A DNA stretch of 64,000 bases from Haliotis rufescens (GCF_023055435.1 NW_025964001.1:32984001-33048000), one strand, 5' to 3'; positions 1-61,836 are shown, counted from the stretch's first letter. Numbers and translations are program-made. The notes: generated from the sequence alone by a model not told the origin.

Positions 1-439
1 CTATCACGTAAAACCATTACCGATCGCTAACGAAATTGACGCACGAACGCTTTCACACATAGGTGTAGGGATCCATTGTTACAAGTCATAAACGTGTAAT
101 TTAATTAAAAGAGCAGGCAGGATGCGTAACGTTTAAAGTTTGACCATACGAACCTTACATATATATTGATTGATATTCCTAAAGTTATATACGGTCCAAA
201 TACTTGTAAAAGGAAATAACCGAAAGTGCCCATTCTTCTAAAAAAAATCAACTATTAAATACCCAAACGTCATCGTCATGCAATTTCTAAAAGATGAACA
301 ACTTGTTGACCTGACCAACTATGCGATCATCTGGTCCTGAACACATCGGTCGTTCTGATTATTGTAATACTAGTATAAACATAATAAGTATTGTGTATGA
401 TTATTTTCAAAAAGCTAAATTTAAGGAAACAAAACAGAA

Positions 440-22520: not shown

Positions 22521-22573
<53 letters not shown>

Positions 22574-22610
22574 AATTAACAAAAAACAAAATAAACCAAA
22601 CAAATGCCCA

Positions 22611-22708
22611 GGGCCCCGTCCCACAAAGCGATCTTAGCGCTGAGATGATCATAACTCCCGTACTTTAACATAGGCTTACGCCCTACGGTCGCTTTGTGGA
22701 ACGGGGCC
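22611..22708. mobile_element. PIF/Harbinger-like MITE, next to a poly(C)-poly(A) tract at 22499-22570
   Basis: GGGCCCCGTCCCACAAAGCGATC ... GGTCGCTTTGTGGAACGGGGCCC. Confidence 0.7.
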
Positions 22709-35110: not shown

Positions 35111-38100
35111 CGTTGTTATATGTTTGTAACCAACTGAAAAGCTCTTTACATATAAATGTCATTGAATTCAGCCATTGCGGTTTATTCTATTAATACTATA
35201 CAACTTAAACTGACAGGTAAGCACAAAAATAATGAAACGTACCATCAACCCATTTCCTTGAGACTTTCAATACAAGCCCAATCCAAAAGTTATAAGATCC
35301 TGGAATATTCTGGATCTCTTTTGCAGTTGAATCGTTGAGTCTGATCAGATCATTTGAGTAATGAGCATGTGTCCATATCTGTTTCTGGCTTTTCGCTGAT
35401 GGGGACACGCACACGCTCCCACTGCAGTTTGCCTGGGGAGTATCTACAAACATATGAAATACAATGTCCGGTAACGTCTTTTTAGTTTACAATTAGAAAG
35501 AAGCCGATGGTAACACAAGATAACGGAGTGACAAAATACATGGGTTTGTATGAGTGCTCCTATCATGAAAATCGTTGTGATGATATGCTTTTATGATAGT
35601 CCATGACAATACAAGATATGTATGCTTAGCATGATTATTGTGTTGTGGACTTCATGAAGGAAATTTCACTACATTTAGATATGTCAACGCTTGAAATGCA
35701 TTCTGAAACCAGCATATGCTGCTTTTTAGCATTTTAGATCATTTACTTTTAAAAAGCGATATGTTTTCTGCAATCTGCATGCGCATGACAATTACGAGCT
35801 TCGGTTGACATTAGCGTTTCAGTTTAGTTGATTCTGGGGATTAAAATTTACATTTGTTAAATTCGCATTGGCCATGTGTGTCACTGGGTAAATCATTTCA
35901 GACTGCAGGAAACGCCGATTACGTAACAGAGTGATGTGAGATAACATAGGTCATACTTACTGTGGGAATAATATGCAAATCTTCGCACAAGGAGTATACA
36001 AGCGAGGTGATATTCAAATGTTATTGAAATTGTATGTGTCTTCAGGGCAACGGCACATCGCCAAGCTCCGACGGTATAAATCCAACGTTTCCTATAAAGA
36101 GGTGAAAGTGACATAAAGTCACACAAACATACACATGTTATTTATGACACAGCGTGATAATTTACATACAATTATCACGTACATTACTTGTAAAACCTTG
36201 AATGAGATGAATTGTTCAGTTTATGACAATTATCATATGGCTATTATGGTCACAACGTAGAGCAACCTGAAGTGAAACTTCAAGATAACAGCGTGATCTT
36301 GATGATTAGATTGTCACAATATCAACGTGAACTTTGAAGATACCACAAGATGATATGTTGCCTGTGAGTATAATCTTTTAACCATACTATCCGATATTTT
36401 ATATAGTATAAGTGTAGGGACGCACATACCAGTACCACGTGTATAGACTGACATCCCAGCCGCGTCGCCACACATTTCATCTGGGTTGCCGGGACACTGC
36501 ATTCCTCTTGCACTCGTATTTGTAACGTTGTACGAATGTCCGAGACAATAACACTTTACTCCCTACAAAACCCAAACACATAATGACTTTGTGTATTCGT
36601 GACTTTGTGTATTCGTGTATTCATTTCTGGTGTCCCCTGCTGTGATATTGCTTGAATATTGCTAAAAGTGGCGTAAAAACATACTCACTCACTGATTCAC
36701 TCACTAACTCAAGAATGCCATTGAAACATATTATAACTTGTTACGTCTGTCATAAAAAAACCCATTGATATCAATATGTAGAGGATCTTTTATTATCCAG
36801 GTGTACATGTACAACATCCATTACATTAACAAATAGTACCCCTCCCTCTCGTGTTTCCTTCATGTGTCGTGTGTGGGTTTTCAAAACAGAAGAAAATGTA
36901 CCAACGTGATCCTATTCTATATACCACTTTGGGATCAATTGTATTTGTGACAAAAAAAACCTCTTACGCTCAGGCCCACTGTACGGTTGGTTTTACAATG
37001 AAGTTGACACTCGTAAACAGAGTTACTGGACACATTGTTTGGGCTCGTTGTGGGTGATGCACTGTACCCATCATAGTTGTAGAGAGGGGTACCATCTTCT
37101 GTAATATCATATATTAGAGGCTTCAGTAACATACTAACTTCAAGTACAATTAATGCATAGACAACGCCACATTGATACATATATAGTATCTATTTAGCTT
37201 TGGGAACTACATGTACTTTTACTTTTGTAGACTCACCTGTCCATATCCATGTTGAATACCTCATGGCTCCTACCCAATAGCTTTTGTTACTGTGTAGAGA
37301 GTTTTCCACGACTGGAGGGAGAAACTCTGTATCAGAAATATACAGATCTCTCTTCGGCGCCATCTTACAGTTTTCCCGAGCATCCCACCAGTTGTTTTCC
37401 TGCTCGTTTATGAAGATGTGTTTTGTCTCCGTGGCTTCAAATGATTAATTAACATATTTTAAAATTATATCCACTGTTGGTATATACATATGCGACATAG
37501 TCAAGACATCTGCTTTCAGATATATAAGTATATATATTACTCCAAGTTTGCTAATGATCACCACTTTAAAAGGTAATACGTCAAATTGCGTGCATCTGTT
37601 GAAATAACCAAAGGCAATATTGCGTGAAGACAAGTTTAATGAATCAAAGTCCGTCGTTATTTGCCACACAATGTCAGCAAACAAGGTGTGACCGATAATC
37701 AGTCAGATCACCTGTCAAAAAGAGAATATCTCACCAAAACTGAAACGTCCAAAAATCACGAAAACAAATTCATTGTCCCCCAAAAACAACGCTAAGTCGC
37801 GCATATGAGATCTACGTGGTGCGGTCACAGCTTATCGCTGTCATCTCTTGCTCCCAATATACAAACATGCTCAGGATATAGTCGGAATCGTACAATCGAC
37901 TCTGCTTTTGGCAGAAATTTCTTATGAATATGGAAAGAGTTTTGTCGCTAATATTTGCCACAGAGCCGGTTTCGGCAGATTACAGGCGCGTGGTAAGAAA
38001 TGCCCCGGCCTAATTAATATCCACTTGGATATGCTAATCACGAACCTTCTGTGAAAAAGGAAAATTCATTCTACTGTCAGGTAAATCATCGTCTAATTTG

Positions 38101-38970
38101 AGAAGATGTTCTTATTTTAACTTGAAAAGCCATGTTTGATTGTTTGTTTTCATTCTGCCGATGTGTAGATCTTTGTTTCAAAATGTTTGTAAGCATGGTA
38201 TCATCACTATTTGATTGTGATTCACAAACACATGCCTATGAGATAGTCGGAGTCGTACAAAGGATTACTATAAGCGCTACTTAATATTATGGGAAATCAA
38301 TGGTTTTGTCTCTTTTATAACAAACAGATAGGGGATATTGTCACAGAAGAACGTTCATCAAGCCGAACACAAAGAAGGCACAGCATGACATTGGTGTAAA
38401 TTATCTATTTGAGATGACGCAAAGTCAGAAAATGTGTAAAATAGCTTGATAGCGTTAGGTGTAACGCTTTGTAGTGATTACAGTCTGTTGTCATATGTTG
38501 CACATTTACCTCAATTTACAATACCGGACGCAAGTCAAACAATCATATTAAACAACCATAAGGTTTTTTTCCCTCTAAACAGGATGTAGACATGCTCCTA
38601 AAACTGCCAATCATTGATATCTTTTGATCGGATATACGACGCTATATATTTAATCTGGTGTATCTATACATTTGTTGTAACTGTCTATTATTATAGAAAC
38701 ACGTTTAACAGCTTTTACTTTGTACATGATATGTTGCATTCCATTGAACGTGATCAAAATACGTTTGCACAATACAATACTTATCACGCATGGACCAAAT
38801 ATAACATTCGATCGACTGGTGTTTCATTACTAAATCAGACAAAAACGCACATCTAGAAAAAGTATATCGAATTATGTTAGGAGCCCATTAACTCTATGCA
38901 CAAATATCAGTCAGTTGTTTCAGTTGATTACAGTATGTTGTCATATGTTGCACATTTATCTCAATTCACA

Positions 38971-39240
38971 GTAGTGAGTGAGATGCGTTTAACGCCACTT
39001 TTAACAATATTAAAGTCATATCGCGGCGTGTCAGCTTAATGTGGGAGGAAAGCCCGAAGTGATGCAGGTCTCAGACGTTTATCAACTTCGATTAAACCGA
39101 AGCACGGATATGGTTCTGACAAAGCTAGAAGCATCGTCGGGGCGAACCGGGATTCGAACCCACAATCATAGGTTTCTGGCGTACCCAAGGGACGGAACTC
39201 TGCACAGCGAAACGTTTAGACGACTGGGCCACCCATGCCC
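38971..39240 (-). mobile_element. SINE family 2 copy
   Basis: Reverse complement of 2854-3133; TSD CTCAATTCA. Confidence 0.85.
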
Positions 39241-39759
39241 CTCAATTCAAAATACCGGGCACAAATCAACAAATCAAACAATAATATTAAACAAGCATAA
39301 GGGGTATTTATGTCCAAACAGGATGTAGACATGCACATAAAAATGCCAATCAATGATATCTTTTGAATTGATACATGACGCTATATACTGAATTTGGTGT
39401 ACATGTACATTTTTTTGTAACTGTCTATTATTATAGAAACACATTTTAACTGCTTTTACTTTGTACATTATTTGTTTTATGTCCATTGAAGCTGATCAAA
39501 ATCTTGCTAGGAACCCATTAATTCGTTTCAAATATATCAAATGAAGTTATTTCATTATTTGATTTATTTTAAAAAAAAAGTTATTGGAGCACAATCCTTT
39601 GAGTACAATCCTTTAGCACTAACCAGGTTCCTTGTATTGTTTGTATGGTAACATTTTCTGATATATTGGAGATAGAGCTTAGCTAATTTTACTGGATGTT
39701 ACCTGATTCGACATCAATATGTCATTCTGTGCTGACGTCAGTACATCTACGATGGCTGG

Positions 39760-40620
39760 TCAATACGTTCTAAGCCTGACTAACTTTCAACTATGGGTCA
39801 TTAAAAAAGTGAACTAGTCAATGTACTACATTGTTGGAGTAGTTCATTGCAAGAGTGTTTGGTCTGTTGAGGCCTGTAGTATATTAGTGACAGCCCGAAA
39901 TGGAAAAGAACGAGTACCGAGCAGTCATCGAGGTATTGACTTTAGAGAAAAATACTTCCCCAAACATTCATGACCGCATGTCACAAGTGAATGGGTATAA
40001 GAGCCAAAGCTATTCAACTTTTAAAGCAGCTATTAGGACACTATTTGACAGCTATGTATAAGGCTTGATGAACAAGTCTTGATGATGACTCTTGGTCTGG
40101 ACCTCCCTCAACTTCCATCCATGAAGATTCAATCTAGCGATAGAAACACTATAATGTCACGTAGACGTATTACCATTGATGAACTCGGGGAAGACACAGG
40201 TCTAAGCCATGGATTGAATGATACTATTATTCATAAATATTTACAGATGAATAAGATATCTGCTCGTTGGGTGACAAAGTTTCTAAATTCTGATCTTAAG
40301 AAAAAAGAACTGGCATTGCCAGAGACATCTTAGAGATAAGTGAGGATGATTTCATCAAATTAAGAAAGAGATAAGTAACGGGTGATGAAACATGGGTCTA
40401 CCAGTTTGATCCCTAGTCAAAACGTCAATCCATGGTTCCACTTCTCCGGCCTACTATGCTGATTTGCTTCATCGCTTGAGAGATTCTATCAAATAAAAAC
40501 AGCGAGGAAAGGGGTTCTACTACTTCATAACAATGCCTCTTCTCACACCTCTCGACATGTAAAGGCTGCTGTGCGACAATGTGGGTTCGAAGAGCTTCCT
40601 CACCCCCAATATTTCTTATA
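39760..40620 (+). mobile_element. Decayed mariner-type transposon in intron 1 of paralogue B
   Basis: MEKNEYRAVIE...IHDRM, MNKISARWV and VTGDETWVYQFDP; absent at the equivalent site of copy C. Confidence 0.75.
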
Positions 40621-41383
40621 TGAGATATCAATATAACGTACAGCCTCTTTAAGGATGTAAGCAAAAAGTACACGCTTTAATCATATCTTCCCGTATTTAA
40701 ATAATGATGACTCCCCGAATAGAATCAGACCGCGGCAATGTCGGACAAGTCCATTTCATGCACATGAGGGTTATATTGGTCTTTCGAAAATATTCTCACA
40801 ATTGTTGCGTCGATTACTGTAATTTTGCTCCTAATACCGATTGATATATCTATCTCACTTTTGGATGTTATCGTTCGGTCAATGCGTTTATCTGCGTTGC
40901 CCTGTTACATCTATGGGGAACACCTCACTAGACACTTCCCTCTAAAAAATAACGTTGTCCTATATACTGACGTCATAAAATATGTTTGAATCTCCAGAAA
41001 TGACGTCCTGATAGAACAATATGCTTCGTTCTTCATTGTTCTTTGCGAATATTCATTATTCATCAATATCTCATATTTCATTTAGACATTAAAATGACTT
41101 TAAAGGACATCATTTGAAAAACGTTTACTTACATATGTTGACACTAGTTGCATATACACAGTGCAGGCAACAGACAAGCAGCCTCGCCGTCCACATATCT
41201 CCGGCCTGTGTGCATATACCTCTACTCGCTGTGGTTTACCCAACAGGGAAGAAGAACGCTCACAACGGTTCGAAAGAAGTGATTATTGTAACGCATAATC
41301 TGTGAAAGACTTTTTTTTTCGATGAATTGCAATATCATAGTATCGAATTTTCCTAATGCGATTACATATACCATGAGCTAAAT

Positions 41384-48590: not shown

Positions 48591-49058
48591 AGTGGGCTGA
48601 ATGTCGGGTATCTGTGAACCAACTCAAACTGACATTGACAATACCCGTTTCACTCTGCCCATTACATTGCCTTCGAATTTTTTTGTTGTTTCGATTTAAA
48701 CCACCCTCACCACCCTCACCACCCTCACCACCCTCACACCTCACACTCTTCAATGTTAAACTGCATCACTAATACATTTTTAACCACTCTTTAACTTAGA
48801 AGTACTTACTTTAATTTATTTCATAATTGTTACATAATATCCGCCAAGATGTGGTTCTTTGATCTATAAAGAGAGACTTTTGCTTCAAACTAGTTTTCAT
48901 CCAGCAACACTTGAAAGATAACCCCATGTTATGTACAGTTACATTTCTCATGTCCTAGAAGTACTTCCCTTTGTACGACCAGACACTACTACCTATACTA
49001 TCCGGATCTCTGCAACAAATATATCATTACCACGATTTCAATTATCTCTGACGACAGA

Positions 49059-49776
49059 TCATGTGTTATACTCATCAGTGGCCTTACATGTGGTCTCATA
49101 CGTATGGTTGTAGGTGTCATCCAACCTGATCACATCAGGCCCAGCACTAGCGACATCATAGTCACCTTCTTCAAACACCTTGTCTATCGCGCCAATGTGA
49201 CTGTACGAGTCATTTACTTTTCTGGCGTTCTCCCCTTGCTGTGGGGTGTCGTAGTTTCCCTCTGCAGCTTCCGTGGGGTCATACAAACCAGCATCACTTT
49301 TATCCCCTCCCGTGGAGCTGCACTTCTCGAAGGTGTGGTACTGAACACCCTCGTCGGAGTTGGCTACACCAGAACCTCCTGCAGATTTGTCCAGTCCAGT
49401 GTCCCTTCCATCTCCGCTTCTGTACTGTAGAATACATTCTGCTGTGTCGTAGTCGGGTCCGGAGAGATGCATGTAGGGCTTTCCTCCTGGCATGTCGGTG
49501 TGTTGTTTACTGGGCGTTGAGAGAGAATTGGACACCTTCTCAACATCAGTCTCAGGATGGTTCACGTAGAATTTCTCAGTGTGAGCATTGGGGTTTACTG
49601 TCGCCGTTGGAACAGGGGGAGTGAAAGGCTTCCCGTCAATTGTGTCTGGGGTTATAACAGAATATGCGCCATTGTCTCTCGGAACATCGAGACCGTCGTA
49701 GATCGTGTTTTCTGTTGGCGGGTTGAAGTTCACCTGTTGATTCGTATCTCTTCTATCCAAATGGAGTTTGCGTTGT
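49059..49776 (-). CDS. Exon 10: cytoplasmic tail with ITAM and multiple pTyr motifs
   Basis: Acceptor TTTCAG|A, phase 2; 14 Tyr; ends at TGA. Confidence 0.85.
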
Positions 49777-52700
49777 CTGAAACAACATTTGAAACATGAT
49801 TGAATGTGATGTACAAACATGCCCTTAATAATAAGTTCAAATAAGTTATGCTTACTTTATTGTTAATATTTAGCACAGTAAGTGGTTAATAAGTTCAGTT
49901 GTTCTTTTTAAGTGGTATACGCAAAGTAATCATTGGAATAACTTTGAAGGAAAATGGCCCCACTGGTCATCTCGGTCGGATTTGAGAGGAATCCATATTT
50001 AATAAGTTCACGTGACTGTCATATCACTGGCGGCAGTCGTGACCATTATATAAATGCTTCTCGATATCAACTTGTATAGTATGGTATACTAAGGAATTAT
50101 GCTATATTACTACTCCATTGCGTCCCGATGTATCATGACTAGTGGATCGAAATGTGTCGGGGCTTGTATCCCGTCCTCAACACTGACAAAACTGTCATGC
50201 TACTCATTTATAGGTCATATGGATTTGGCGAAAACACATGTTTGTGAATGGATGCACTAGTGTTGAATGTGGTTGCTTCAATGTTTGCCCGATATGTGCG
50301 TGTAACATATCATTTTCACACAGAAATATACAGCATTGCTCAATACCAGTAGAGAAAGCTTAAGATCAATTACTAATGTGTAAACCATCCTGTTGAAATA
50401 TAAGAAAAGTGATACATGTAGAAATTGTCTTATTTCACAAAACAGTTGCTTCAAAGATTTAAATAAACATCACATTAATTTAACAAAATAACAAGTTACA
50501 TGTCAAGAATGGTATCTGATAAATGAATTCATTCTTCAGATTCTGGTTTCTTTTCGCTATTTAAAGAAGTGCTGCCAGGAACCTCACCTTTGCAGAAGAA
50601 ATACAAGAGTCACGACTACCAGGAAGAAAACCACACATCCTGCAGCCAGCCCTATGCTTACACCTGGACAAAAAGGAAGTGTTAGATGTCAAAAGCTTGA
50701 TAAATATGTTAAACGTACATACTAGTTTACACAAGAAATATTGGGCATGTCCAGTAAGTATGTATACTATACTGAAGTAAACGATCACTATTGAATGCAC
50801 ACCGAAAACTGCTACCTTCATAGAAGTACACAATATATAATAATATGTCATGCAATCATGACAAGGGGCCTGTTACAAACAGAGCTAAGATGATTGTACT
50901 TTTGATATTTTAGCATAAACTAACAACAGTTGTGGAGCTAAATGCCCATTTCTGGTGTTCCCCGCCTGATAAAACTGTAATATTGCTATAATCTGCGCAA
51001 ACTCATACTCATTCACTAAGTCGCATTGTGGAATATTGAGTACTACTATATACAAACAATTAATTTTCAATATTGTAAGGAATAGAGATACGTGAAACTG
51101 AATTCTCTATCGCTTTCACATGGACTGTTGATAATACTGTAATTGGTAATTGTGATGATAGATGAGGTTTTACACCACTTTTAATAATATTTAAAAGTGA
51201 GGAATCGAACCCTGCTCTTTAGTGTAGCGAGCGAGCGTTTTTATGACAGGGTTACCTCTGCAGTGACCACTTACCCTTCTGAATATCAAGAGCTGACGGA
51301 CTGTCTGTGGTGGGATGAGAGGGATCAGCCCTGGAAACTGTTGATAAAGATGACGTTGCTAGTTTAGATATGATGGAACGGGTGATATAACAAGTGAAAA
51401 AGTCTCCNNNNNNNNNNNNNNNNNNNNNNNNNNNNNNNNNNNNNNNNNNNNNNNNNNNNNNNNNNNNNNNNNNNNNNNNNNNNNNNNNNNNNNNNNNNNN
51501 NNNNNNNNNNNNNNNNNNNNNNNNNNNNNNNNNNNNNNNNNNNNNNNNNNNNNNNNNNNNNNNCGGGCGGTAGTAAGATCTGAGGAAGAAAGGAACACAT
51601 TCCTTCATTAATAAGAAAAAGGACGATGTTGTTTTGCATTTTAGTATCATCTTATAACATTATCTGAGCGATGTATACGAGTGAATTAAAGAGAATCCAC
51701 TCCTCTTTACCATTGTGTAAAACAACATATTCGTCTGACGTGCTTAGTACCTTCACAAACAGAGGCAAGGCGAAAATGGCAGGGTAGCCAGTATGGTTTC
51801 CAGACGCCATCTTTTTTCAAAGCTTGGCATGTCGATATTTGTGAAACAACGAACGGAAGGAAGATGTAATCCTCATTTCCATTGGCCTCTTGTCCTGGAA
51901 ACATACAATTATCCACTGACTGTACAATGCAACCAGCGGTATTAATTATTCTAATTGATAAGGTTATGTTAATAGTTGTACATACTTACGTAAATAGATG
52001 AATGTATTTGGTTCTATGCTGTTGCTGTCTAGTTATTTGTAGTAATCAACTGCTAACTTATTAATTCAAACAAATCAAAGACCAATTTCCCGCTGTAAAC
52101 GTTTTTTACAATTTAGTGAGTGGCTGAGTATGTTTTTACGCCGCTTTTAGCAATATTCCAGCAATATCACGGCGGGGACATCAGAAATGGGCTTCACACT
52201 TCGTACCCATGTCGGGAATCGAACCCGGGTATTCGGCATGACGAGCGAACGCTTTAACTACAAGGCTACCCGACCGACCCTTTTTACAATTTAAACTGAC
52301 AGGTTAGCACAAAATAATAAAACGCACCATCGACGTATTTCCTTGAGACTTTCAATACAAGCCCAATCCAAAAGTAATCAGTTGGTCCTTTAATATTTTG
52401 GATCTCTCTTGCAGTGGAATCGTTGAGTCTGATCAAATCATTTGAGTAATGAGCATGTGTCCATGTCTGTCTTTCCGCTGATGAGGACACGCACACGCCC
52501 CCACTACAGTTTGCCTGGGGAGTATCTACAAACACATGAAATACGACGTCCGGTAACGTCTTTTTAGTTGTACATTTAGAAAGTAGCGGATGGTAACACA
52601 AGATGACAGAGTAAAACGCAATATATGGGATTTTATAAGTTCGTATTTTAGTAAAATCGTTGTGATGATATGCTTATAAGATAGGCCATGACAATACAAG

Positions 52701-55700
52701 ATGTTTATGCTTAGTGCATTGTGTTGTACTTGTCGTGGGCTGCATGAAGGAAATTTCAGTCTATTCAGATATGTCAACGTTTGAAATGCATCTTCAAAGC
52801 AGTTTCATCTGCTTTTTAGCATTTTATATAATTTACTTAATACATGTTTTCTGCGCTCTCCATGCGCGTGACAGTTACGATCTTGGGGTGACATCAGCGT
52901 TTTAGTTTAGTTTATTCTGAAGTATTAAAGTTTACATTTGTTGACTTCGCATTGGTCATGCGTGTCCTGGGTAAATCATTTCAGACTGTAGGAAACGCCG
53001 ATTGTGTCACAGAGTGATGTGAGATAACATAGGTCATACTTACTGTGGGAATAATATGCAAATCTTCGCTTATAATCTATACAAGCGTAGTAATAGTCTA
53101 GTTCTATTGAAACTGTATTATTCATTTTCACTCCATAAGCACATCGGCCATCCTTCGAGGGTTTAAATCCAACGTTTCCTACAAAGAGGTGAAAATGACG
53201 TAAAGTCACACAAACATACACAAGTTATTTATGACACAGCATAATTTACATACAATTATCAGGTACATTACCTATACTTGTAAAACCTTGAATGAAATGA
53301 ATTGTTCGGTTTATGACAATTATAATATGACTATTATGTTCACAACGTAGAGCAGCCGAAAGTAAGGCTTCAGGATAACAGCGTGATCTTGATGATTAGC
53401 TTGTCACAATATCAACGTGAACTTCGAAGATAACACAAGATGATATGTTGCCAATGAGTACAAGCTTTTAACAAGCTTATCCGATATTTTATATAGTATA
53501 AGTGTAGGGACGCACATACCAGTACCACGTGTATAGACTGACATCCCAGCGTCGTCGCCACATATTTCATCTGGGTTGCCCGGACACTGCATCCATCTTG
53601 CACTCGTCTTTGTGACGTTGTACGAATTTCCGAGACAATAACACTTTTCCCCCTACAAAAAAACAAAACAACAAACACATAATGACTTTGTGTACTCCTG
53701 TCATAGTCAACCAGGGCACGGCATCCCACCTGCTGCACTGGTATTTGTGAGGTGAGGTGGAATGGGGTTTAACGTCGCGTCCAAGATTATTGCACTTATA
53801 TAGCGACGTGCATGCACGTGTATCTATATGTGAGGCTGCTTGTACTAGTCCGGACTAATGCCGATTTATAGTGCTAGCTCACTGAGATACCATGCCGCAA
53901 CATGAATACCCCACTCAGACACAGTATACTGACTCCGAGCCGACCAGTCCTTGTTTTAGCCCCTTAATGCCGAGCGCCAGACAGGGTAACAACAAGTACC
54001 ATCTTTTAACGTCTTTTGGTATGACGCGGCCGGGGATCGAACCCCGGACCTTCCGCTCTCCGGGCGGACGCTCTACCACTAGACCACGAAGGCGGTCCAC
54101 TGGTATTAGTATATGCTTACTTTTTCCAAGACAATAACACTCCTCCCCTTCCCACAACAAACCACAAAATATGTTGTATACTCCTGTCATAAAAAGAGTA
54201 TTTTCCTAACATGACTAATGATATGAACTAAAGCGGTTCTTACATTATCATGGTGTGCTTGTACAACATCAGTCACATTCAGAAATAGAATCCCTACCTC
54301 CCTCATGCTTTCTGTATGTGTTGTTTGGGGTTTTCAAAACAGAAGCCAATGTAAATATGTGATAGAATTCTTTTAACCACCCTTTCAGACACAAAAGGTT
54401 TTACTGTCCTACGTTCAGGCCTATTGTGCGGGTGGTTATAAACTAGTATCCAAAAGAAACGATACCAACTTATTTTCAAAATTGTTTTTTACTAAGTGAA
54501 TTGTCTAGTATGAAAACATGCCAATTCGTATTGCACATCCCAAACACAGCATAGTCGATAAAAAATACCGGGAACACGTGATCACTTCCGGGAAAAAACG
54601 TAAATTTCGTGAAAGTGACATTTCCCTCTCTAGCATGTTATGCACGTGCATAAAAACTGTATAAATCGGCTGATCAGACACGTTGATATCACAGCAACAA
54701 AAAGAACACAAGATATGCCACGTTTGACAGCCATCGAGAGAGAGAGAGCCGTTGGAATGGTCCAACAAGGAGCGTCACACGTCGACGTCGCCAGAAGGTT
54801 GGGCTGCGCACGCATCACTATCACCAGGTTGATGCAGCGGTTACGTTAGACAGGTCAGACGTCAGACAGGCCCAGGAGTGGAAGACCACGAGTAACCACG
54901 CCCCGTGAACATCGTTACATCCGGGTAATACACCTAAGGAACCGCACCGTAACAGCGACGTCCACGGCGGCTAAAGCACTGGGACACAGGATCAGTCGAC
55001 AGACCGTCTACAGGAGACTACGGCAGTATGGTATCCGGCCACGTCATCCCTACCGCGGACCGCTCCTGACGCCTCGACACCGGAACAACAGACTGACTGG
55101 GCCAGGCGAGTTCGACGTTGGCAACGGCGGGACTGGGCACGTGTTATGTTCTCTGATGAGAGCAGATTCCTCATCTTCAGAAACGATGGACGGCAGCTTG
55201 TATACCGACGATTTGGTGAACGTTTGGCGCCTAACTGTATCCAACAGGTCCGGCCGTTTGGAGGTGGAGGGTTAATGGTTTGGGGTGGCATATGTGATGA
55301 CGTCAAAACGATGCTCGTCGTAATTCGTGGAAACCTGAATGCACAGCGTTATCTTGATGACATCCTACGGCCTGTTGTGGTGCCCTTTATTCAGCAACAG
55401 CCTCGTGGACTCCTTTTCCAACATGACAATGCAAGGCCACACACAGCAAGATTGACACAGAACTTCCTTGCCAACGCCAACGTACAGGTTTTGCCATGGC
55501 CCGCATGTTCACCGGACATGAATCCCATCGAGCACTTATGGGACCACCTCGATCGGCAAATCCGACGTCGCCGTGTGCCTCCAGTCAACGTCCAGGACTT
55601 GGAACGATGTCTCCTCGAGGAATGGCAACGCATCACTCCCAACGTCATCAGTCCGTAGGCGTGTTCTGGCATGTATTGATGCTCACGGTGGACATACCCG

Positions 55701-58700
55701 CTACTGACTTGACTTTGAGACGTGTGGTGTGACATTTCCCGTTGTTTCTGTGAATAGTGCTCTAACGAAATGTTCATTTTTCGACCCCACCCATCTTTAA
55801 AGGCTTGTCATATTGGTTGTACAGATTTTATTGCAATGAAATTTTTGTACAGATGCTGTGAAAGGATTTCTCAAAAGCATAACACCAATCCTAAACTTCT
55901 GCATTGTTTAGTTTTTCTTTTATGTCGTTGCAAACAGGTGGTATCGTTTCTTTTGGACACTAGTTTACATTGAAGCAGACCCGAAAAAGTGAATTATAAA
56001 GCGACCCTGTTGTATTTCCTGTTGATGGTGTACTGTACACATCATAGTTGGAACGTTCAGAGAAAATAACACATTTCCCCTACAAAAAATAGTACATATA
56101 ACATGTTAGGAAACATAAACCTTTATGGATAACAACTTCTGGTTTTTGTTTGGATTTAGCGACGTTTCGATGTAGATTCTTCCACCGTTATCAAGCTGGA
56201 GTGGAGGAAGGTGTAAGAATCTACATCGAAACGTTACTTACTGGAATAAACAGACGTTGTTATCCATAAAGTTGTATACTTTCTTATTTACTCATCAACT
56301 GTGTGAAGCCAATTTCTGTGATATTGCTTGAATATTGCTAAATGTGACGTAAATCCATACTCACTAACTAACTCTAGAATGCCAATCAAACATATAACAT
56401 GTTGTGTACTTCTGTCATAAGAAAACCTTGATATGAATATGAAGAGGATCTTTTATTATCCTGGTGTGCTTGTACAACATCAATTACATTAACAAATAGC
56501 ATCTCTCGCTCTCGTGTGTCGTTTGTGGATTTTCAAAACAGAAGAAAATGTACCAACGTGATCTATTCTTTATACCACTTTGGGATCAATAGTGTTTGTG
56601 ACAAAAAACCTCTTACGCTCAGGCCCACTGTGCGGTTGGTTTTACAATGAAGTTGACATCCGTAAACAGAGTTACTGGACACATTGTTTGGGCTCGTTGT
56701 GGGTGATGCACTGTACCCATCATAGTTGTAGAGTGGGGTACCATCTTCTGTAATATCATACATTAGAGGCTTCAGTAACAGATAAACTTCAAGTACAATT
56801 AATGCATAGACAACGCCAGGATGATACATATATATAATATCTATTTATCTTTGGGAACTACATGTACATCTACATGTCATATCATGCACAAGAGGCATCC
56901 ATAACAGATTAACTATACATACAGATAAATGCGTACACAACGTCGCTTATATATATCATTAATTTATATATTATCTATTGAGATGTGGGAACTACTTCTA
57001 CAGACTCACCTGTCCATATCCATGTTGAATACCTCATGGCTCCTACCCAGTAGGAAGTGTTGTTGTGTAGAGAGTTTTCCATGACTGGAGGGAGGAATTC
57101 TGTGTCAGAAATATACAGATCTCTCTTCAACGCCATCTTACAGTTTTTCCGAGCATCCCACCAGTTGTTTTCCTCCTCGTTTATAAAGATGTGTTTTGTC
57201 TCCGTGGCTGCAAATGATTTAGTAACATATTTTTAAATTATTTGTACTGTTTGTATATACATATGTGACGTAGTCAAGACATCTGCTTTCAGATATGCAA
57301 GTTTGCTGACGATCACCACTTTAAAGGGTGATACATCAAATCTGTTGAAATAACCAAAGGCAATATTGCGTGAAGAAATCTTTAATGAATCAAAGTCCGT
57401 CGTCATTTGCCACACAATGACAGCAAAAGAGATGTGACCAATTATCAGTCAGGTCACCTGTCAAAATAATAATATCTTACCAAAAACGAAACGTCAAAAA
57501 ATCATGAAAACAAATTCATTGTAAAAAAAAACCCACTAAGTAGCGCATATGAGATCTACGTGGTGCGATCACCGTCATCTAATGCCCCCAATAAGTGCCA
57601 TGATGGTTGCCAAGGGGTTCTTGTTCCACTCTTCATTATTACCATTGCCGAGTTCCTGTAGAGATGCCGGAGGGAAAGGGCGTTGTGAGAGGGCGATCTG
57701 CAGCTCTTTCCATATATGTTCGATAGGGTTGAGGTCTGGTGACCGTTGATGCTCTGAGTAGGCATCAACGATCCTGGCACGATGAGATCGTGCGTTATCG
57801 TCCATAAGGAAAACCTCGGTCCAATAGCAGCAGCATATCGTCTCACGTACACATCTAGAAATAAAGCGACAAAACCCTTTCCATAAAGTCATCCCTGTAA
57901 CGCCCGCCTGTCACCATGCTCCGCTGTTCTTCCAGCCCTACTGATCCCATCCCATGATTTACCCCTCCACACACACACTTCCATAGTGGTTACGTTCGGC
58001 TACGTTGGAATCCTGTTTTTCACAAACTCGGGCAAGGCGATCTGTGAAGTCCAGATAGTATCTCGATTCATCAGTGACAAATACTGGAGCTCAATCCTGG
58101 TCTGTTCAGTTGACGTGATGACCAGCCTATGTTGGGTCAGTGGGATGTGAATGTATGCCCTCAGTGACCGGGCATCAGCCTAAGGGAGACGATTACGCAC
58201 TGTCTTAGTAGAAACGTTAACGTCATTGGCCTTCCTCGGGTAATTTCTGATTGTGGTTGCAGTCACGACGTGATGACGTCTTGCTGCAATCAGGAGAAAC
58301 TTGTCTGCCCGCTGTGTGAAGGAACGCTGTTGAACACCTTCATGTCGCTGGCTAAGCGTATCCAAACGTCTGACACGTCGCTATATAAGTGCAATAATCT
58401 TGTGCTGGAGGTTAAAGCCCATTTCACCTCCATGCCCCGCCGATCACAATGTGGCTGACACCGAAGACATTTGCAACGTAACGTTGTGTTGACCCGGTTT
58501 CAAGCATGCCTATGCATCTACATAATCCTTCGGTCGTCAAACGACGATTTGATGCTAAGAGGGGATCAGTGCATTTCATTGTTGAAATCCACAGTAGCAA
58601 ATGCGGTTGTGCTCTCTGATGATGATGCGCAACGATTCTGTCACGATACATCCAATCACAGGTTTTCAAGCACCTCGTGCACATGCATCGTGCTCATGAC

Positions 58701-61700
58701 TGCATGCCTCTATCCGTTCACTATGAAATTGAGTTCCTGTAGGAACATTGGATATGTCAAACTTTATTGATAATGAATGATATTTTTATTTCATTAAAAT
58801 TTGATCCTTGGCAAATTATAAGAAGTACACATCTATGCGTGCGTGTGTGTATGTGCAGGCGCATGGGTTCAGCTAAGATACAAGTTTTGGCGTTCATAAC
58901 TAAGAAGGCAGATGTAAAACCCAATTGATGATAAGAGGGTTATTTTGATTATTACCTCTGTCAAAATCGTGTCACTATTCGTCGGCCGTAAGAGAGACGT
59001 ACCCCTTTGCCATTACGATAAGTCCACTCGGGTGTAAAATACCATCTTTTACGAACAACATATTCACTTACATTTTCTTTATGAGACCGATGAGCAAATA
59101 GTCCTTTGTATAAAGTAATCGCAAATGATAAAAATAAAGAAGTTTGTATGATTCTGTTTGACTAAACATTTTAAATGAACAAATAAAACACCCAAACTGA
59201 TATTATATTAGTGAAACTAAACCTAATGACAATCGTCAAGCATTCATGGCCGTTTAACGTGCTTTTTTTACGCGAACATTTTAAAGTGATTCACAATTAT
59301 ATACATGGTTATGGTCGGAATCATACAATCGACTCTGCTTTGGGCAGAAAATTCTTTTGTATATGGAAAGGGTTTTGTCGCTATTAGTTTGCCACAGATT
59401 ACAGGCTTGTTGTTAGACATGCCCGAGCCTAATTAATATCCACTTGGATATGCCAATCTCGATCTTTTCACCTGTGCGAAAAAGGAAAACTCATTCCACG
59501 GTCAGGTAAATCATCGTCTAATTGGAGGAGTTAAACTTGAAAAACCATGTTTGATTGTTTGTTCTCATTCTGCCGATGTATAGAACATTGTTTCAAAATT
59601 GTTTGTAAGCATAGTATCATCACTATTTGATTGTGATTCACAAACACATGCCTATGAGATAGTCGGAGTCGTACCATGGATTAATATAAGCGCAGATTAC
59701 TTATTATTATGGGACGCAGATTACTTATTATTATGGGAATGGTTTCATCTCTTTTATAACATAAGGGGATATTGTCACAGAAGAACGTTCATCAAGCCGA
59801 ACATAGGGGGGTGGGGGGTGGGGGGTGGGTGGGGTGTCGACAAGAAGTTTATATGTCATCAAAGGAAACACAAAGATGGGAGAGCATGACATTGGTGTAA
59901 ATGTTCTATTTGAGATGAGGCAAAGTCAGAAAATGTGTAAAACAGCTTGATAACGCTAGGTGTAACGCTTTGTGGTGATTACAGACTGTTGTCATATCTT
60001 ACACATTTACCTCATTTCACAATACCGGACACAAATCAAACAATCATATAAAACAACCATAAGGGGTATTTACGTCCAGGCAGGGTGTAGACATGCTCAT
60101 AAAACTGCCAATCATTGATATCTTTTGATCGGATATACGACGCTATATATTTAACCTGGTGGTTATATACATTTGTTGTAACTATCTATTATTATAAAAA
60201 ACACGTTTAACTGTTTTTACTTTGTACATTATATGTTGCTGTCCATTGAACGTGACCAAAATACGTTTGCACAATACAATACTTTTTACGCATGGATAAA
60301 AATATAACATTCGATCGACTGGTGTTTAATTACTAAATCAGAAAATAACGCATATCTAGAAAAAGTATATCGAATTATGTTAGGAGCCCATTACCTCTAT
60401 GCACAAATATCAAAGTCAGTTGTTTCAGTATTTGTTGTCATATAAAAATGATTTATTTAAAATAAGGATGTATTTGAACAAAGGTGATACCGTGGAACAC
60501 AATACTGTAGCACAAACCCAGTTCCTGGTATTGTTTGATACATTTGGATAACATTTTCTGATACATTAGAAATGAAGCTCAGCTTACATTTCACTTGATG
60601 TCACCTGATTTGACATTATTATACCATTCTGTGTTGACGTCAGTACGTCTATGTTCACTTTATATATGCTAACGTTTTCATATGTCATTTTATTCTCATT
60701 TTCACCGAACTAAAAATATAGCCCTATGTATCAATTCTATAGCGATACATGATTGGGAGTTTTATGAGAACATCAACGTCCTGATTCGATAACTTCCTTA
60801 TGCCAGTTTAATTTTTGTCCGGGATTGAAAAATGAGGTTAATCTGTGACATATAACAATATTCCGTACTTATAGCAAATCAATGCACCAAATAAACGTTG
60901 GTATTACCTTTTCGAAACTTAAACATAATGTCAATATATTAACAGTTTGTGCTACTTCCTTGTGTCGATCGCACAGAATCCCCAAAGTACACTCAAAATC
61001 TTAATAGACATATGCAGAACATACATTTAGCTAGACAGGGTATATCATAAACTGAATAATTGTTATTTACTTAATCACACATTGTTCCTGTACGAGACTT
61101 TACATAAACCTACCCCAATTATATACTGATGAAATACAAAAAATGTGCACATCACAATATATCATTATCAATTTTATCGCTGTAGTATATGTAGTCAGTA
61201 AATAGCTGATGTCGTTATCGTCTGAAAGAATGCAGGACACCGTGTCAATTTACAGATAATTCCTTATTTCCTACCATCCGTGTATTGAAATAAGTGTTAT
61301 CTTACGTGAATGAAGAAAAGAGATACGTTAAAGACACTGAATTTCAACTGACATATCCAAAGACACACTGGGGCGAAACAGTGCGGGATAAATTGAAAGA
61401 ATGTAGTCAACCATACAATGCCCAAAATTTAACATAAAAACACAATGTTCACATATGTGAACTACAATACCATATCGTGACACAAAGATCGTCATAAAAA
61501 TTGAATGTATAAAGAAAATCTTAAAGAATGATGTCATACACCGAGATGCTGTTTCTTGACCAATTTTAACTATTGCAGTCACATATTTCGTTATATACTT
61601 GCGGGAATACTGCATGTAATTCCACGCGATAATAGTATCAAAACTAAAGGCCCAGACATGTCCGAGATATTTCTGGCTTTAAACCATATGTATTAAGTTG

Positions 61701-61836
61701 TGATATAAACCACATTAAACGTAAAGACATTAAAATGACTTAAAAGGACATCATGTGAACACGTTTACTTACATATGTTGACACTAGTTGCATATACACA
61801 GTGCAGGTAGCAGACAAGCAGCCTCGCGGTCCACAT
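49059..61836 (-). CDS. Intact 10-exon type-I membrane receptor (paralogue C), 626 aa: SP - CTL/WSC/CTL ectodomain - stalk - TM - Tyr-rich ITAM tail
   Basis: join(61836-61773, 57207-57010, 56747-56617, 53652-53520, 53178-53044, 52525-52328, 51894-51751, 51358-51275, 50663-50588, 49776-49059) = 1881 nt. All introns GT-AG, phases 1,1,0,1,1,1,1,1,2 compatible, no internal stops. Exon bounds 1-9 are conserved in the paralogues. Confidence 0.8.
50588..50663 (-). CDS. Exon 9: transmembrane helix
   Basis: GVSIGLAAGCVVFFLVVVTLVFLLQR, followed by basic QRK; TCCAG| ... |GTGAGG. Confidence 0.85.
51275..51358 (-). CDS. Exon 8: Ser/Thr/Pro-rich stalk
   Basis: ATSSLSTVSRADPSHPTTDSPSALDIQK; TAG| ... |GTAAGT. 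Confidence 0.75.
51408..51563. other. Assembly gap (156 N) in intron 7 of paralogue C
   Basis: Direct reading. Confidence 1.
51751..51894 (-). CDS. Exon 7: CTL-like domain C-half
   Basis: GQEANGNEDYIFLPFVVSQISTCQALKKDGVWKPYWLPCHFRLASVCE (C..W..C......CE pattern). Confidence 0.85.
52116..52280 (-). mobile_element. SINE family 1, full length
   Basis: 13-bp TSD TTTTTACAATTTA. Confidence 0.9.
52328..52525 (-). CDS. Exon 6: second CTL-like domain N-half
   Basis: NCSGGVC...QTWTHA...YFWIGLVLKVSRKYVDG (WIGL and W/YxDG motifs). Confidence 0.85.
53044..53178 (-). CDS. Exon 5: CTL-like C-half
   Basis: GNVGFKPSKDGRCAYGVKMNNTVSIELDYYYACIDYKRRFAYYSH. Confidence 0.8.
53520..53652 (-). CDS. Exon 4: WSC domain C-half
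   Basis: GEKCYCLGNSYNVTKTSARWMQCPGNPDEICGDDAGMSVYTRG (WSC CxC...CPG...CG....SVY). Confidence 0.9.
53746..54097 (-). mobile_element. tRNA-derived SINE family 4 (Meta-domain-like), full length
   Basis: A-box TGGTCTAGTGG, B-box GGTTCGATCCC, central GTCATACCAAAAGAC...GGCGCTCGGCATTAAGGG, 10-bp TSD CACTGGTATT. Confidence 0.85.
54441..55965 (+). mobile_element. Near full-length Tc1 (DD34E) transposon with an inactivated transposase
   Basis: TA TSDs and ~27-bp TIRs AACTAGTRTCCAAAAGAAACGATACCA. ORF from 54715 (MPRL..HTH) with TAG at 54847 and a frameshift near 55095. FSDESRF, QHDNARPH and SPDMNPIE with 34-residue D-E spacing. Confidence 0.95.
56158..56197 (-). ncRNA. Putative minimal type-I hammerhead ribozyme in an inverted Penelope-like terminal repeat (56121-56271)
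   Basis: AGC-UUGAUAA-C-GGUG..CAUC-GAAA-CG-UC-GCU: U3:A8 core variant, 3-bp stem I, palindromic ACGU stem III. Confidence 0.45.
56617..56747 (-). CDS. Exon 3: WSC domain N-half
   Basis: EDGTPLYNYDGYSASPTTSPNNVSSNSVYGCQLHCKTNRTVGLS. Confidence 0.85.
57010..57207 (-). CDS. Exon 2: first CTL-like domain N-half
   Basis: STETKHIFINEEENNWWDARKNCK...TSYWVGAMRYSTWIWT. Confidence 0.9.
57570..58830 (-). mobile_element. Decayed Tc1-like element (C-specific), with a SINE family 4 tail at ~58372-58432
   Basis: MLETGSTQRYVANVFGVS, TDESRY, FLMDDNARSHR and SPDLNPIEHIW. Confidence 0.8.
61773..61836 (-). CDS. Exon 1: signal peptide
   Basis: MWTARLLVCYLHCVYATSVNI|GTAAGT; 64-nt exon conserved in all three paralogues. 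Confidence 0.8.

What the first reader, a model, noticed from the sequence alone, without database searches (positions are those of the whole stretch)
49059..61836. Hidden 10-exon CTL-WSC-CTL transmembrane receptor with an ITAM tail: candidate Dectin-1-like signalling receptor family
Seen in sequence: ten phase-compatible exons give a 626-aa ORF with signal peptide, CTL-like and WSC motifs, mucin-like stalk, one TM and a Tyr-rich tail; two more paralogues lie in tandem. Established: fungal WSC domains can bind beta-glucans; Dectin-1 is a Ca2+-independent CTL that signals through a hemITAM and Syk. Inference: an independently assembled invertebrate receptor joining glycan-sensing folds to ITAM/Syk-type signalling. 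No EPN/QPD/WND motifs are visible, so canonical Ca2+-dependent sugar binding is unlikely. I do not recognise this architecture as a named family, but I cannot search databases.
Basis: partly seen in the sequence, partly recalled or inferred. Interest (0 to 1): 0.9.

Follow-up and report, generated by a model that had tools for sequence, protein, structure and literature searches.

The report
Abalone lectin-WSC receptor with tyrosine tail
This is a real, transcribed red-abalone gene, already in RefSeq as an uncharacterized protein, for a membrane receptor that joins two lectin-like domains and a WSC domain to a tyrosine-rich tail, and its proposed Dectin-1-like immune signalling is plausible but untested.

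Summary
The ten-exon minus-strand gene is real. All introns are GT..AG and the ORF is continuous: 619 aa from the ATG at 61836, 627 aa from the ATG at 61860. It is identical to RefSeq XP_046338729.1 (Haliotis rufescens LOC124120054, "uncharacterized protein"), so it is not hidden.

Spliced contigs from two studies join exons 4-5 and 6-7-8-9-10. The N gap lies inside intron 7 and is spliced out.

Pfam, a family profile against PDB sequences, and an AlphaFold model of a 70%-identical relative support the C-type lectin-like (CTLD) and WSC folds. The sugar/Ca2+ motifs are absent.

The model and the cysteine pattern suggest the two CTLDs are intertwined. The first N-half pairs with the last C-half, and the WSC domain plus a permuted inner CTLD sit between them.

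The tail motif YDGL-x8-YSVI fits the ITAM consensus (chance 1-2% by shuffling). It is kept in this subfamily in four abalone species, but only 6 of 23 tail-bearing relatives have L at +3 of the first tyrosine. YSVI and DDSYSHI are conserved family-wide.

The genome holds two Syk-type loci. Oyster transmembrane lectins with hemITAM-Syk signalling are already published. The family was found only in Haliotis, and function is untested. The same scan carries first-reader notes on this stretch (ITAM, nested WSC, cysteine loss).

The parts
61773..61836 (-). Exon 1: start codon and signal-peptide-like N-terminus. RefSeq uses the in-frame ATG at 61860, which adds 8 residues.
   Evidence: The GTAAGT donor is phase 1. 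SignalP was not available, so the signal peptide is inferred from hydrophobicity and the AF2 helix.
57010..57207 (-). Exon 2: N-terminal half of the first CTLD (WWDAR..C, YWVGA, WIWT).
   Evidence: Pfam Lectin_C on P0023 residues 42-115 matches profile positions 2-73. The exon alone gives E = 0.019. The family profile hits the N-part of the DC-SIGN CRD.
56617..56747 (-). Exon 3: end of the CTLD N-half (EDGTPLY), a Ser/Thr/Pro linker, and the first part of the WSC domain.
53520..53652 (-). Exon 4: second part of the WSC domain.
   Evidence: Pfam WSC E = 0.013 on the exon and 9.1e-5 on P0023. Yeast Wsc1 (7pz2) hit. The joint to exon 5 is seen in X1, X2 and X4.
53044..53178 (-). Exon 5: a CTLD C-terminal half (beta3-beta5) that keeps C2 and C3 but has Tyr in place of the last Cys.
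   Evidence: Spliced contigs. Alignment and Cys table.
52328..52525 (-). Exon 6: N-terminal half of the second CTLD (WIGL), lacking the alpha1 Cys.
51751..51894 (-). Exon 7: C-terminal half of the second CTLD (C2, C3, C4).
   Evidence: The joints to exons 6 and 8 are in an X4 contig. Family profile positions 229-344 match PDB CTLDs, E down to 6e-6.
51408..51563 (.). Assembly gap (156 N), inside intron 7 (51338-51750).
   Evidence: The X4 contig goes from 51751 straight to 51337.
51275..51337 (-). Exon 8: short Pro/Ser/Thr stalk (21 codons).
50588..50663 (-). Exon 9: transmembrane segment.
   Evidence: Kyte-Doolittle 3.0 over 19 residues. AF2 helix 362-400 in P0023. Joints on both sides in X1 and X4.
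49059..49776 (-). Exon 10: basic juxtamembrane stretch, a 238-aa acidic, Tyr-rich, disordered tail, and the stop codon.
   Evidence: pLDDT is about 22-29.
49653..49700 (-). ITAM-consensus motif YDGL-x8-YSVI (P0023 Y415 and Y427).
   Evidence: Regex and shuffles. Conservation table.
48749..49058 (-). 3' UTR, at least this far.
   Evidence: Contigs X4 record 14 and X2 records 9 and 10.
32340..41211 (-). Copy B. The signal-peptide exon and exons 2-8 are recognisable, the TM exon is split by an indel, and there is no tail exon.
   Evidence: tblastn.
21979..28008 (-). Copy C. It has the signal-peptide exon and exons 4-8, with no exon 2/3, TM or tail. RefSeq LOC124120083 (P0024, 364 aa) joins copy B's 5' exons to copy C's 3' exons.

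Best explanation
The stretch encodes Haliotis rufescens LOC124120054. It is a spliced, expressed type I membrane protein of a tandemly expanded gene family that my searches found only in abalones.

The ectodomain holds two C-type lectin-like domains and a WSC domain, and it has none of the Ca2+/sugar-ligating residues. It is predicted to fold as an intertwined unit. The first N-half pairs with the last C-half to form an outer CTLD. The WSC domain and a circularly permuted inner CTLD sit in the hinge.

A short stalk and one transmembrane helix lead to a 238-aa disordered acidic tail with conserved tyrosine motifs.

My best reading is a cell-surface recognition receptor whose ligand is bound without Ca2+ and is still unknown. 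I infer that clustering leads to phosphorylation of the tail tyrosines, which then recruit SH2 proteins. In this subfamily the membrane-proximal YDGL-x8-YSVI would fit the tandem SH2 domains of a Syk-type kinase. The family-wide YSVI and DDSYSHI would act as single (hemITAM-like) sites.

Shown: the gene model, transcription and splicing, the folds, motif presence and conservation, and the presence of Syk-type loci. Inferred: ligand class, phosphorylation, Syk recruitment and an immune role.
For: Gene model:
- Continuous 10-exon ORF identical to P0023.
- Spliced contigs from two studies.

Folds:
- Pfam Lectin_C above its cut-off and WSC at E = 9e-5.
- Family profile against PDB: CTLDs E = 6e-6, yeast Wsc1 E = 4.8e-4.
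- AF2 model of P0024: pLDDT 79.7, pTM 0.76.
- VIA-align: 50 CTLD hits at Z 10.6-13.9.
- Foldseek: Wsc1 at TM 0.63.

Intertwined topology:
- Every VIA row spans model residues about 25..335 with only about 110 aligned residues.
- The low-rmsd Foldseek single-CTLD matches are only about 55-70 columns long, half-domain length.
- The A subclade lost both the last Cys of exon 5 and the alpha1 Cys of exon 6.

Tail:
- ITAM pattern expected by chance at 0.9-2.1%.
- Kept in A-type proteins of H. rufescens, H. cracherodii, H. rubra and H. asinina.
- Y427 present in 20/23 relatives, always with I or V at +3. YSHI tyrosine present in 21/23.

Signalling partners:
- Two tandem-SH2 plus HRDLAARN tyrosine-kinase loci in the genome.
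- Molluscan ITAM/hemITAM-Syk signalling is published for oyster CgIgR (PMC6994640) and for CgCLec-TM1 and CgCLec-HTM (review PMC13027682).
Against: - The first ITAM tyrosine has L at +3 in only 6 of the 18 relatives that keep it. The others have A, E, D or V.
- The neighbouring copy D has YDGF.
- Pfam's ITAM model gives no hit on P0023 at E <= 0.1.
- There are no data on tissue, induction, phosphorylation or ligand.
- Contig depth is low, about 4-5.
- WSC stays below Pfam's gathering score, and only 6 Cys are seen where the domain has 8.
- The fold evidence comes from a 70%-identical relative, because the whole-protein model of P0023 was poor (pLDDT 38.8).
- The topology is read from aligned ranges, not from coordinates.
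- The cysteine pattern of P0029, P0007 and P0040 fits neither topology cleanly.
- Other first-reader notes in this genome also report ITAM-like tails, so a selection effect is possible.
Confidence: 0.5

Rival explanations
1. Endocytic or phagocytic uptake receptor. The tyrosine motifs (ENTxY, YSVI, YMHL, YSHI) would act as YxxPhi / FxNxxY-type sorting signals for adaptor complexes, as in the mannose-receptor family, not as docking sites for Syk.
For: - Type I orientation with tandem CTLDs.
- The best whole-model Foldseek matches are the multi-CTLD endocytic receptors MR, Endo180, PLA2R and DEC-205 (E = 2.6e-4).
- The family-wide conserved features are single YxxI motifs and ENTxY rather than the dual ITAM.
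- From my own knowledge, not tested here: the mannose receptor uses FENTLY.
Against: - At 238 aa with about 9 conserved tyrosines in acidic contexts, the tail is far longer and richer than typical sorting tails.
- The residue at -5 of ENTxY is T or A, not F.
- TM-scores of the multi-CTLD matches are low (0.12-0.16).
- Uptake and signalling are not mutually exclusive.
Confidence: 0.2
2. Non-immune surface sensor of matrix, mineral, mechanical load or cell adhesion. The WSC head, stalk, TM and tail echo the yeast Wsc1 layout. WSC and CTLD co-occur in polycystin-1. Ca2+-site-less CTLDs include biomineralisation proteins.
For: - The WSC part matches the Wsc1 mechanosensor domain (PMC9024836).
- The VIA list includes struthiocalcin-1 (Z 13.1) and ovocleidin-17 (Z 11.9), tied with immune CTLDs.
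- A secreted family form exists (P0024).
- From my own knowledge: polycystin-1 carries WSC plus CTLD, and abalone nacre perlucin is a CTLD protein.
Against: - A tandemly expanded, fast-diverging, genus-restricted family is more typical of recognition genes than of core mechanosensors.
- The stalk of this copy is only about 20 aa.
- Conserved acidic tyrosine motifs point to phosphotyrosine signalling, which this reading does not explain.
- There is no expression evidence either way.
Confidence: 0.2
3. A decaying or functionless member of a duplicating family, whose ITAM match is coincidence.
For: - The neighbouring copies B and C are incomplete.
- Expression is low.
- dN/dS of the C-half exons against copies B and C is 0.45-1.15 on very few codons.
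Against: - The 619-codon ORF is intact across ten exons.
- All splice sites are canonical and used.
- The H. cracherodii protein is collinear at 86% identity.
- Tail motifs are conserved across four species.
Confidence: 0.05

Closest known systems
Dectin-1 (CLEC7A) and CLEC-2, the vertebrate hemITAM C-type lectin-like receptors
   Same: - CTLD fold: murine Dectin-1 (2bpd_A) is the top VIA row (Z 13.9, rmsd 2.0, 109 aligned).
- No Ca2+/sugar motifs.
- A tyrosine motif of the ITAM kind in the cytoplasmic part.
   Different: - Dectin-1 is type II with one CTLD, and its short N-terminal tail carries DEDGYxxL.
- This protein is type I with two CTLDs plus WSC and a 238-aa C-terminal tail.
- The Dectin-1 row is tied (within 1 Z) with many unrelated CTLDs, so there is no specific kinship.
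- Beta-glucan binding is untested.
Oyster transmembrane C-type lectins CgCLec-TM1 and CgCLec-HTM (review PMC13027682) and oyster CgIgR (PMC6994640)
   Same: Molluscan membrane receptors whose tyrosine motifs (hemITAM or ITAM) recruit Syk and drive ERK and cytokine expression. This is the same logic as proposed here.
   Different: - The oyster lectins have a single CRD and no WSC, and CgIgR has Ig domains.
- No sequence relatives of the abalone family were found outside Haliotis.
- The oyster proteins were tested experimentally. This one was not.
Mannose-receptor family (MR, Endo180, DEC-205, PLA2R)
   Same: - Type I membrane proteins with tandem CTLDs and tyrosine-based tail motifs.
- Best whole-model Foldseek matches.
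   Different: - No CysR or FNII domains, and only two CTLDs.
- A WSC insertion and a far longer tail.
- The predicted intertwined topology is not seen in those structures.
Yeast Wsc1 cell-wall integrity sensor (PDB 7pz2, PMC9024836)
   Same: - WSC fold: profile E = 4.8e-4, Foldseek TM 0.63 and rmsd 3.4 over 98 columns.
- Overall layout of extracellular WSC, stalk, one TM segment and a cytoplasmic tail.
   Different: - No CTLDs in Wsc1.
- The abalone WSC matches Pfam profile positions 16-81 only and has 6 of the 8 Cys.
- Tail chemistry is unrelated.
Polycystin-1 (PKD1)
   Same: WSC and C-type lectin domains occur in one ectodomain. This is from my own knowledge and was not tested here.
   Different: Polycystin-1 is a very large 11-TM protein with LRR, PKD, REJ and GPS modules, and its WSC and CTLD are separate and sequential.
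Domain-swapped CTLD dimers (BDCA-2 crystal form 3wbr; loop-swapped snake-venom IX/X-binding proteins)
   Same: Halves or loops of CTLDs are exchanged between two domains. 3wbr chains and snaclecs are among the Foldseek matches.
   Different: In those proteins the exchange is between two chains. Here it is predicted within one chain and with a third domain inserted in the hinge.

Membership tests
C-type lectin-like domain (Pfam PF00059) | Score at or above the Pfam gathering cut-off (22.6 bits) | tested here: met
   P0023 scores 25.1 bits, E = 3.2e-5. Relatives reach up to 36.7 bits. Single exons alone fall below the cut-off.
C-type lectin-like domain (Pfam PF00059) | CTLD fold | tested here: met
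   On the AF2 model of P0024 (70% identical, pLDDT 79.7), VIA-align gives 50 CTLD chains at Z 10.6-13.9 and rmsd about 2-3 A. The direct model of P0023 was too poor to use.
Ca2+-dependent carbohydrate-recognition CTLD (true C-type lectin) | EPN or QPD motif plus WND motif | tested here: not met
   None of EPN, QPD, WND, EPS, QPN or EPD occurs in the protein.
C-type lectin-like domain | Canonical C1-C4 and C2-C3 disulfide cysteines in each domain | tested here: inconclusive
   C2 and C3 are present in both C-halves. The C4 of exon 5 and the C1 of exon 6 are replaced in the A subclade. This fits one lost disulfide if the domains are intertwined.
WSC domain (Pfam PF01822) | Score at or above the Pfam gathering cut-off (27.8 bits) | tested here: not met
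   P0023 scores 23.1 bits, E = 9.1e-5, over profile positions 16-81. The best relative, P0008, scores 26.7 bits.
WSC domain (Pfam PF01822) | WSC fold and similarity to a solved WSC domain | tested here: met
   The family profile hits 7pz2_A (yeast Wsc1) at E = 4.8e-4. Foldseek gives prob 1.0, TM 0.63 and rmsd 3.4 over 98 columns on the P0024 model.
WSC domain (Pfam PF01822) | Eight conserved cysteines | tested here: not met
   Six Cys lie in the segment (model positions 118, 122, 135, 137, 154, 162). The N-terminal part of the profile is not matched.
ITAM | Yxx[LI]-x(6-8)-Yxx[LI] in a cytoplasmic tail | tested here: met
   YDGL-x8-YSVI lies 26 residues after the TM segment. Chance is 0.9% (strict spacing) or 2.1% (x6-12) in 200,000 shuffles of the tail.
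ITAM | Match to Pfam PF02189 | tested here: not met
   No hit on P0023 at E <= 0.1.
ITAM | Conservation of both Yxx[LI] halves among relatives | tested here: inconclusive
   The second half is kept in 20/23 relatives (I or V at +3). The first Tyr is kept in 18/23 but has L at +3 in only 6. The motif YDGL-x8-YSV[IV] is intact in A-type proteins of four species.
ITAM | Tyrosine phosphorylation and binding of the tandem SH2 domains of a Syk-family kinase | not testable with these tools
   Only the precondition was checked. Two tandem-SH2 plus tyrosine-kinase loci exist in the genome.
Dectin-1 cluster (group V, type II, hemITAM CTLRs) | Type II orientation with an N-terminal DEDGYxxL hemITAM and a single CTLD | tested here: not met
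   The protein has an N-terminal signal-like segment, a TM segment at residues 356-381 of the 619-aa model, a C-terminal tail and two CTLDs.

The most novel reading that the evidence does not exclude
Abalones evolved their own receptor family in which two C-type lectin-like domains are swapped within one chain, giving an outer CTLD built from the first N-half and the last C-half. A WSC domain and a circularly permuted inner CTLD are lodged in the hinge. I found no description of this fold arrangement. This Ca2+-independent recognition module would be wired to an ITAM/hemITAM-type phosphotyrosine tail that signals through a Syk-type kinase, an independent assembly of Dectin-1-like logic.
Probability: 0.2. 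Interest if true: 0.75.

Novelty: new variant of a known kind. Interest (0 to 1): 0.5.

Why it matters
Abalones are farmed and endangered animals that suffer from bacterial and viral disease, and their immune receptors are poorly known.

A genus-restricted, tandemly expanded family of membrane proteins with lectin-like and WSC domains and conserved tyrosine motifs is a concrete set of candidate recognition receptors. There are at least 23 first-half exons, all on one chromosome.

If the tail engages a Syk-type kinase, it adds a gastropod case to the oyster evidence that ITAM-type signalling predates adaptive immunity.

The predicted within-chain swap of two CTLDs around an inserted WSC domain would be a new way of building a CTLD module. 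Disulfide mapping can test it directly.

Tried and rejected
- **Joined model not sent to any tool.** Exons were searched by reference. The join was made only inside a local script, to test frame continuity and to compare with database proteins. Once P0023 was returned by a search and proved identical, it stood in for the joined model.
- **Per-exon Pfam.** This gave only sub-threshold hits.
- **First AF2 job.** The whole P0023 with 14 sequences was poor (pLDDT 38.8). Foldseek on it gave only weak CTLD rows. I replaced it with the ectodomain-only relative P0024 and 27 sequences.
- **ESM Atlas.** All feature scores were below 0.9, so they are leads only.
- **Literature.** Searches for the LOC and XP identifiers, for abalone plus WSC, and for intramolecular CTLD swapping found nothing relevant.
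- **dN/dS per exon against copies B and C.** There are too few codons, and B and C are probably decaying. Both dN and dS are higher in the 3' exons, so it is not evidence of positive selection.
- **Dectin-1 kinship.** I rejected a specific relationship because the match is tied with many CTLDs, the orientation is opposite and the architecture differs.
- **ARAGORN.** It found no tRNA in the window, so the highly covered short repeats are not tRNA genes.
- **Junctions E1-E2, E2-E3 and E3-E4.** I could not test them with reads, because the single read-laying run was limited to 6 kb.
- **Tissue of expression.** It could not be read because run records are coded.
- **Gap letters.** They were not looked up.

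Full report
**What is there**

On the minus strand of 49059-61836, stop-to-stop translation and splice-site reading give ten exons. They are E1 61836-61773, E2 57207-57010, E3 56747-56617, E4 53652-53520, E5 53178-53044, E6 52525-52328, E7 51894-51751, E8 51337-51275, E9 50663-50588 and E10 49776-49059.

Every intron starts GT and ends AG, the phases fit, and the joined frame is open for 619 codons. The join was made only inside a local script.

A search of 1.84 billion representative proteins with the tail exon by reference, followed by a word-indexed search, returned P0023. This is RefSeq XP_046338729.1, "uncharacterized protein LOC124120054 [Haliotis rufescens]", 627 aa. Its residues 9-627 equal my translation exactly. 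RefSeq starts at the in-frame ATG at 61860.

So the window is red abalone and the gene is already annotated, though unnamed. The coordinates are right.

**Transcription and the gap**

I laid contigs of four RNA-like runs on 48300-53760 (the only such call allowed, 5.5 kb). They show coverage on the exons and none on most intron bins. Five joints have CT..AC ends on the + strand, which is GT..AG on the minus strand:
- 53177/53519 (E4-E5), seen in X1, X2 and X4
- 51893/52327 (E6-E7)
- 51337/51751 (E7-E8)
- 50661/51273 (E8-E9)
- 49776/50588 (E9-E10), seen in X1 and X4

These come from two studies. One 353-nt contig joins E7, E8, E9 and E10, so the last lectin exon, stalk, TM segment and tail sit on one RNA.

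The assembly gap (51408-51563) lies inside intron 7 and is skipped by that contig. The H. cracherodii protein P0001 shows no extra residues there. A further alternative exon inside the unread part cannot be excluded, because relatives such as P0013 have a longer Ser/Thr stalk at that point.

E1-E2, E2-E3 and E3-E4 were outside the laid stretch. They rest on the two RefSeq models. Depth is low, about 4-5.

**Domains**

On P0023, Pfam Lectin_C scores 25.1 bits against a cut-off of 22.6, matching residues 42-115 to profile positions 2-73. WSC scores 23.1 bits, below its 27.8 cut-off, at E = 9.1e-5 over residues 112-171.

A profile of 27 family members searched against PDB sequences hits:
- many CTLDs with its positions 229-344 (best E = 6e-6)
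- the N-part of the DC-SIGN CRD with positions 29-93
- 7pz2_A with positions 90-175 (E = 4.8e-4)

7pz2 is the WSC domain of yeast Wsc1 (PMC9024836).

AlphaFold on the whole protein failed (pLDDT 38.8). On P0024, a 364-aa ectodomain-only relative that is 70% identical, with 27 aligned sequences it gave pLDDT 79.7 and pTM 0.76.
- Foldseek finds multi-CTLD receptors (E = 2.6e-4), single CTLDs, and Wsc1 (prob 1.0, TM 0.63).
- VIA-align finds 50 CTLD chains at Z 10.6-13.9, led by murine Dectin-1 but tied with many others.

No EPN, QPD or WND motif is present.

**An unexpected topology**

The exon order is N-half of a CTLD (E2, start of E3), linker and WSC (E3, E4), a C-half (E5), a second N-half (E6), then a second C-half (E7).

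In one search every one of the 50 CTLD rows spans model residues about 25 to about 335 while aligning only about 110 residues. In one search the low-rmsd Foldseek alignments to single CTLDs are only 55-70 columns long, which is half-domain length. So the model contains no contiguous complete CTLD. Its best CTLD is built from the first N-half and the last C-half.

The cysteines fit this. Most relatives have all eight CTLD cysteines. The subclade that holds this gene has lost exactly the last Cys of E5 and the alpha1 Cys of E6. Those two would be partners in the intertwined arrangement, whereas in a sequential arrangement two cysteines would be left unpaired.

The connections between N- and C-halves are flexible or variable linkers, as expected for swap hinges. 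That last point is inference.

Caveats:
- I saw aligned ranges, not coordinates.
- Three relatives (P0029, P0007, P0040) have patterns that fit neither scheme.
- The cysteine loss may be a single evolutionary event.

I rate this topology at about 65%. Two first-reader notes (s1-816399, s1-816514) gave me the lead.

**The tail**

After the TM segment (Kyte-Doolittle 3.0) come basic residues and then 238 acidic residues with 14 Tyr. This region is disordered in the model.

YDGL-x8-YSVI at 49700-49653 fits the ITAM consensus. Shuffling the tail produces such a pattern in 0.9% of trials (x6-8) or 2.1% (x6-12).

The tail is a family module. The own-genome search gave 16 matches on contig C223. Only 11 representatives were found in the whole protein library, all but one marginal hit from four Haliotis species.

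Among 23 tail-bearing relatives:
- The second ITAM Tyr is kept in 20, always with I or V at +3.
- The first Tyr is kept in 18 but has L at +3 in only 6.

YDGL-x8-YSV[IV] is intact in A-type proteins of H. rufescens, H. cracherodii, H. rubra and H. asinina, and P0007 has YDQL-x9-YTAI. The neighbouring copy D has YDGF. Pfam's ITAM model does not hit.

More widely conserved are YSVI, DDSYSHI (21/23, reminiscent of the acidic hemITAM context), QYxxL, DYDTA, YDVAS and DDTYNH.

The safest statement is a multi-tyrosine scaffold, with an ITAM-like pair in this subfamily.

**Can the pathway exist here?**

SH2 and tyrosine-kinase exon hits in the same genome reveal two loci with two SH2 domains followed on the same strand by kinase exons carrying HRDLAARN:
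- C1:61,697,081-61,707,811
- C605:21,382,594-21,414,847

This is the architecture of the Syk/ZAP-70/Shark family (established knowledge). Orthology was not tested.

In oysters, CgIgR uses an ITAM to recruit CgSyk (PMC6994640). The transmembrane lectins CgCLec-TM1 and CgCLec-HTM use hemITAM-type motifs, Syk and ERK (review PMC13027682). The concept is therefore not new for molluscs. The architecture is.

**Family and neighbours**

The E2-type exon has 23 matches, all on contig C223, in clusters at 16.03-16.22, 17.16-17.22, 18.80-18.83, 25.38 and 33.02-33.09 Mb. Word-indexed searches with the ectodomain, and then with the family profile, found only Haliotis proteins, all "uncharacterized".

The two downstream copies in the window are incomplete. 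RefSeq joins copy B's 5' exons to copy C's 3' exons in a 364-aa secreted model, P0024.

**Verdict**

The most likely function is a Ca2+-independent surface recognition receptor that signals through phosphotyrosine motifs (0.5). Within this, I put true ITAM-Syk coupling at roughly 0.3.

The rivals are an endocytic receptor (0.2), a non-immune matrix, mineral or mechano-sensor (0.2), and a functionless copy (0.05).

I class it as a new variant of a known kind.

Noticed in passing
window 5480-6931 (+): Intact single-exon ORF of 483 aa with an N-terminal RING finger (zf-C3HC4, E = 3e-9) and a C-terminal NHL / beta-propeller-like region. It looks like a TRIM/NHL-type E3 ligase gene.
   Followed up: partly
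window 55146-55658 (+) and 57578-57910 (-): Remnants of Tc1/mariner-type DDE transposases (Pfam DDE_3, E = 1.9e-13 and 2e-6) sit inside intron 3 and intron 1 of the gene.
   Followed up: partly
window about 48466-48590 and about 52131-52275: A short repeated element lies in the 3' flank and in intron 6. Its summed contig depth is 1e5 or more in all four RNA-like runs, and many different loose ends flank it. This fits a very abundant dispersed repeat. ARAGORN finds no tRNA there.
   Followed up: partly
window 21979-41211 (-): RefSeq LOC124120083 (P0024, 364 aa, no TM or tail) maps as a join of copy B's 5' exons with copy C's 3' exons. It skips copy B's own 3' exons and copy C's signal-peptide exon.
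   Followed up: partly
window exons E1-E4 versus E5-E7, copies A and B: Between copies A and B, synonymous divergence is 0.11-0.22 in exons 1-4 and 6, but 0.29 in exon 5 and 0.84 in exon 7. This suggests a mosaic history or gene conversion of the 5' part rather than positive selection alone.
   Followed up: partly
G000:C223:33051350-33052242 (about 3.4 kb beyond the window's end): The tail exon of a further copy (D, RefSeq LOC124120375, P0002) is 84% identical. Its TAG sits four codons before gene A's stop and is that copy's normal stop, as in the H. cracherodii protein. Its first ITAM half reads YDGF.
   Followed up: partly
G000:C1:61697081-61707811 (+) and G000:C605:21382594-21414847 (+): Two loci each have two SH2 domains followed by tyrosine-kinase exons (HRDLAARN). 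They are candidate Syk-family kinase genes of red abalone.
   Followed up: partly
window 52282-52327: One contig of run X2 (record 12) runs 46 nt past the exon 6 donor into intron 6. This is either unspliced RNA or DNA carried in the run.
   Followed up: no
P0005 versus P0015 (H. rufescens LOC124111983, 16-Mb cluster): Predicted isoforms differ by exactly 45 aa, the length of the exon-5-type C-half. Skipping of that half-domain exon may therefore be a regular isoform in the family.
   Followed up: no
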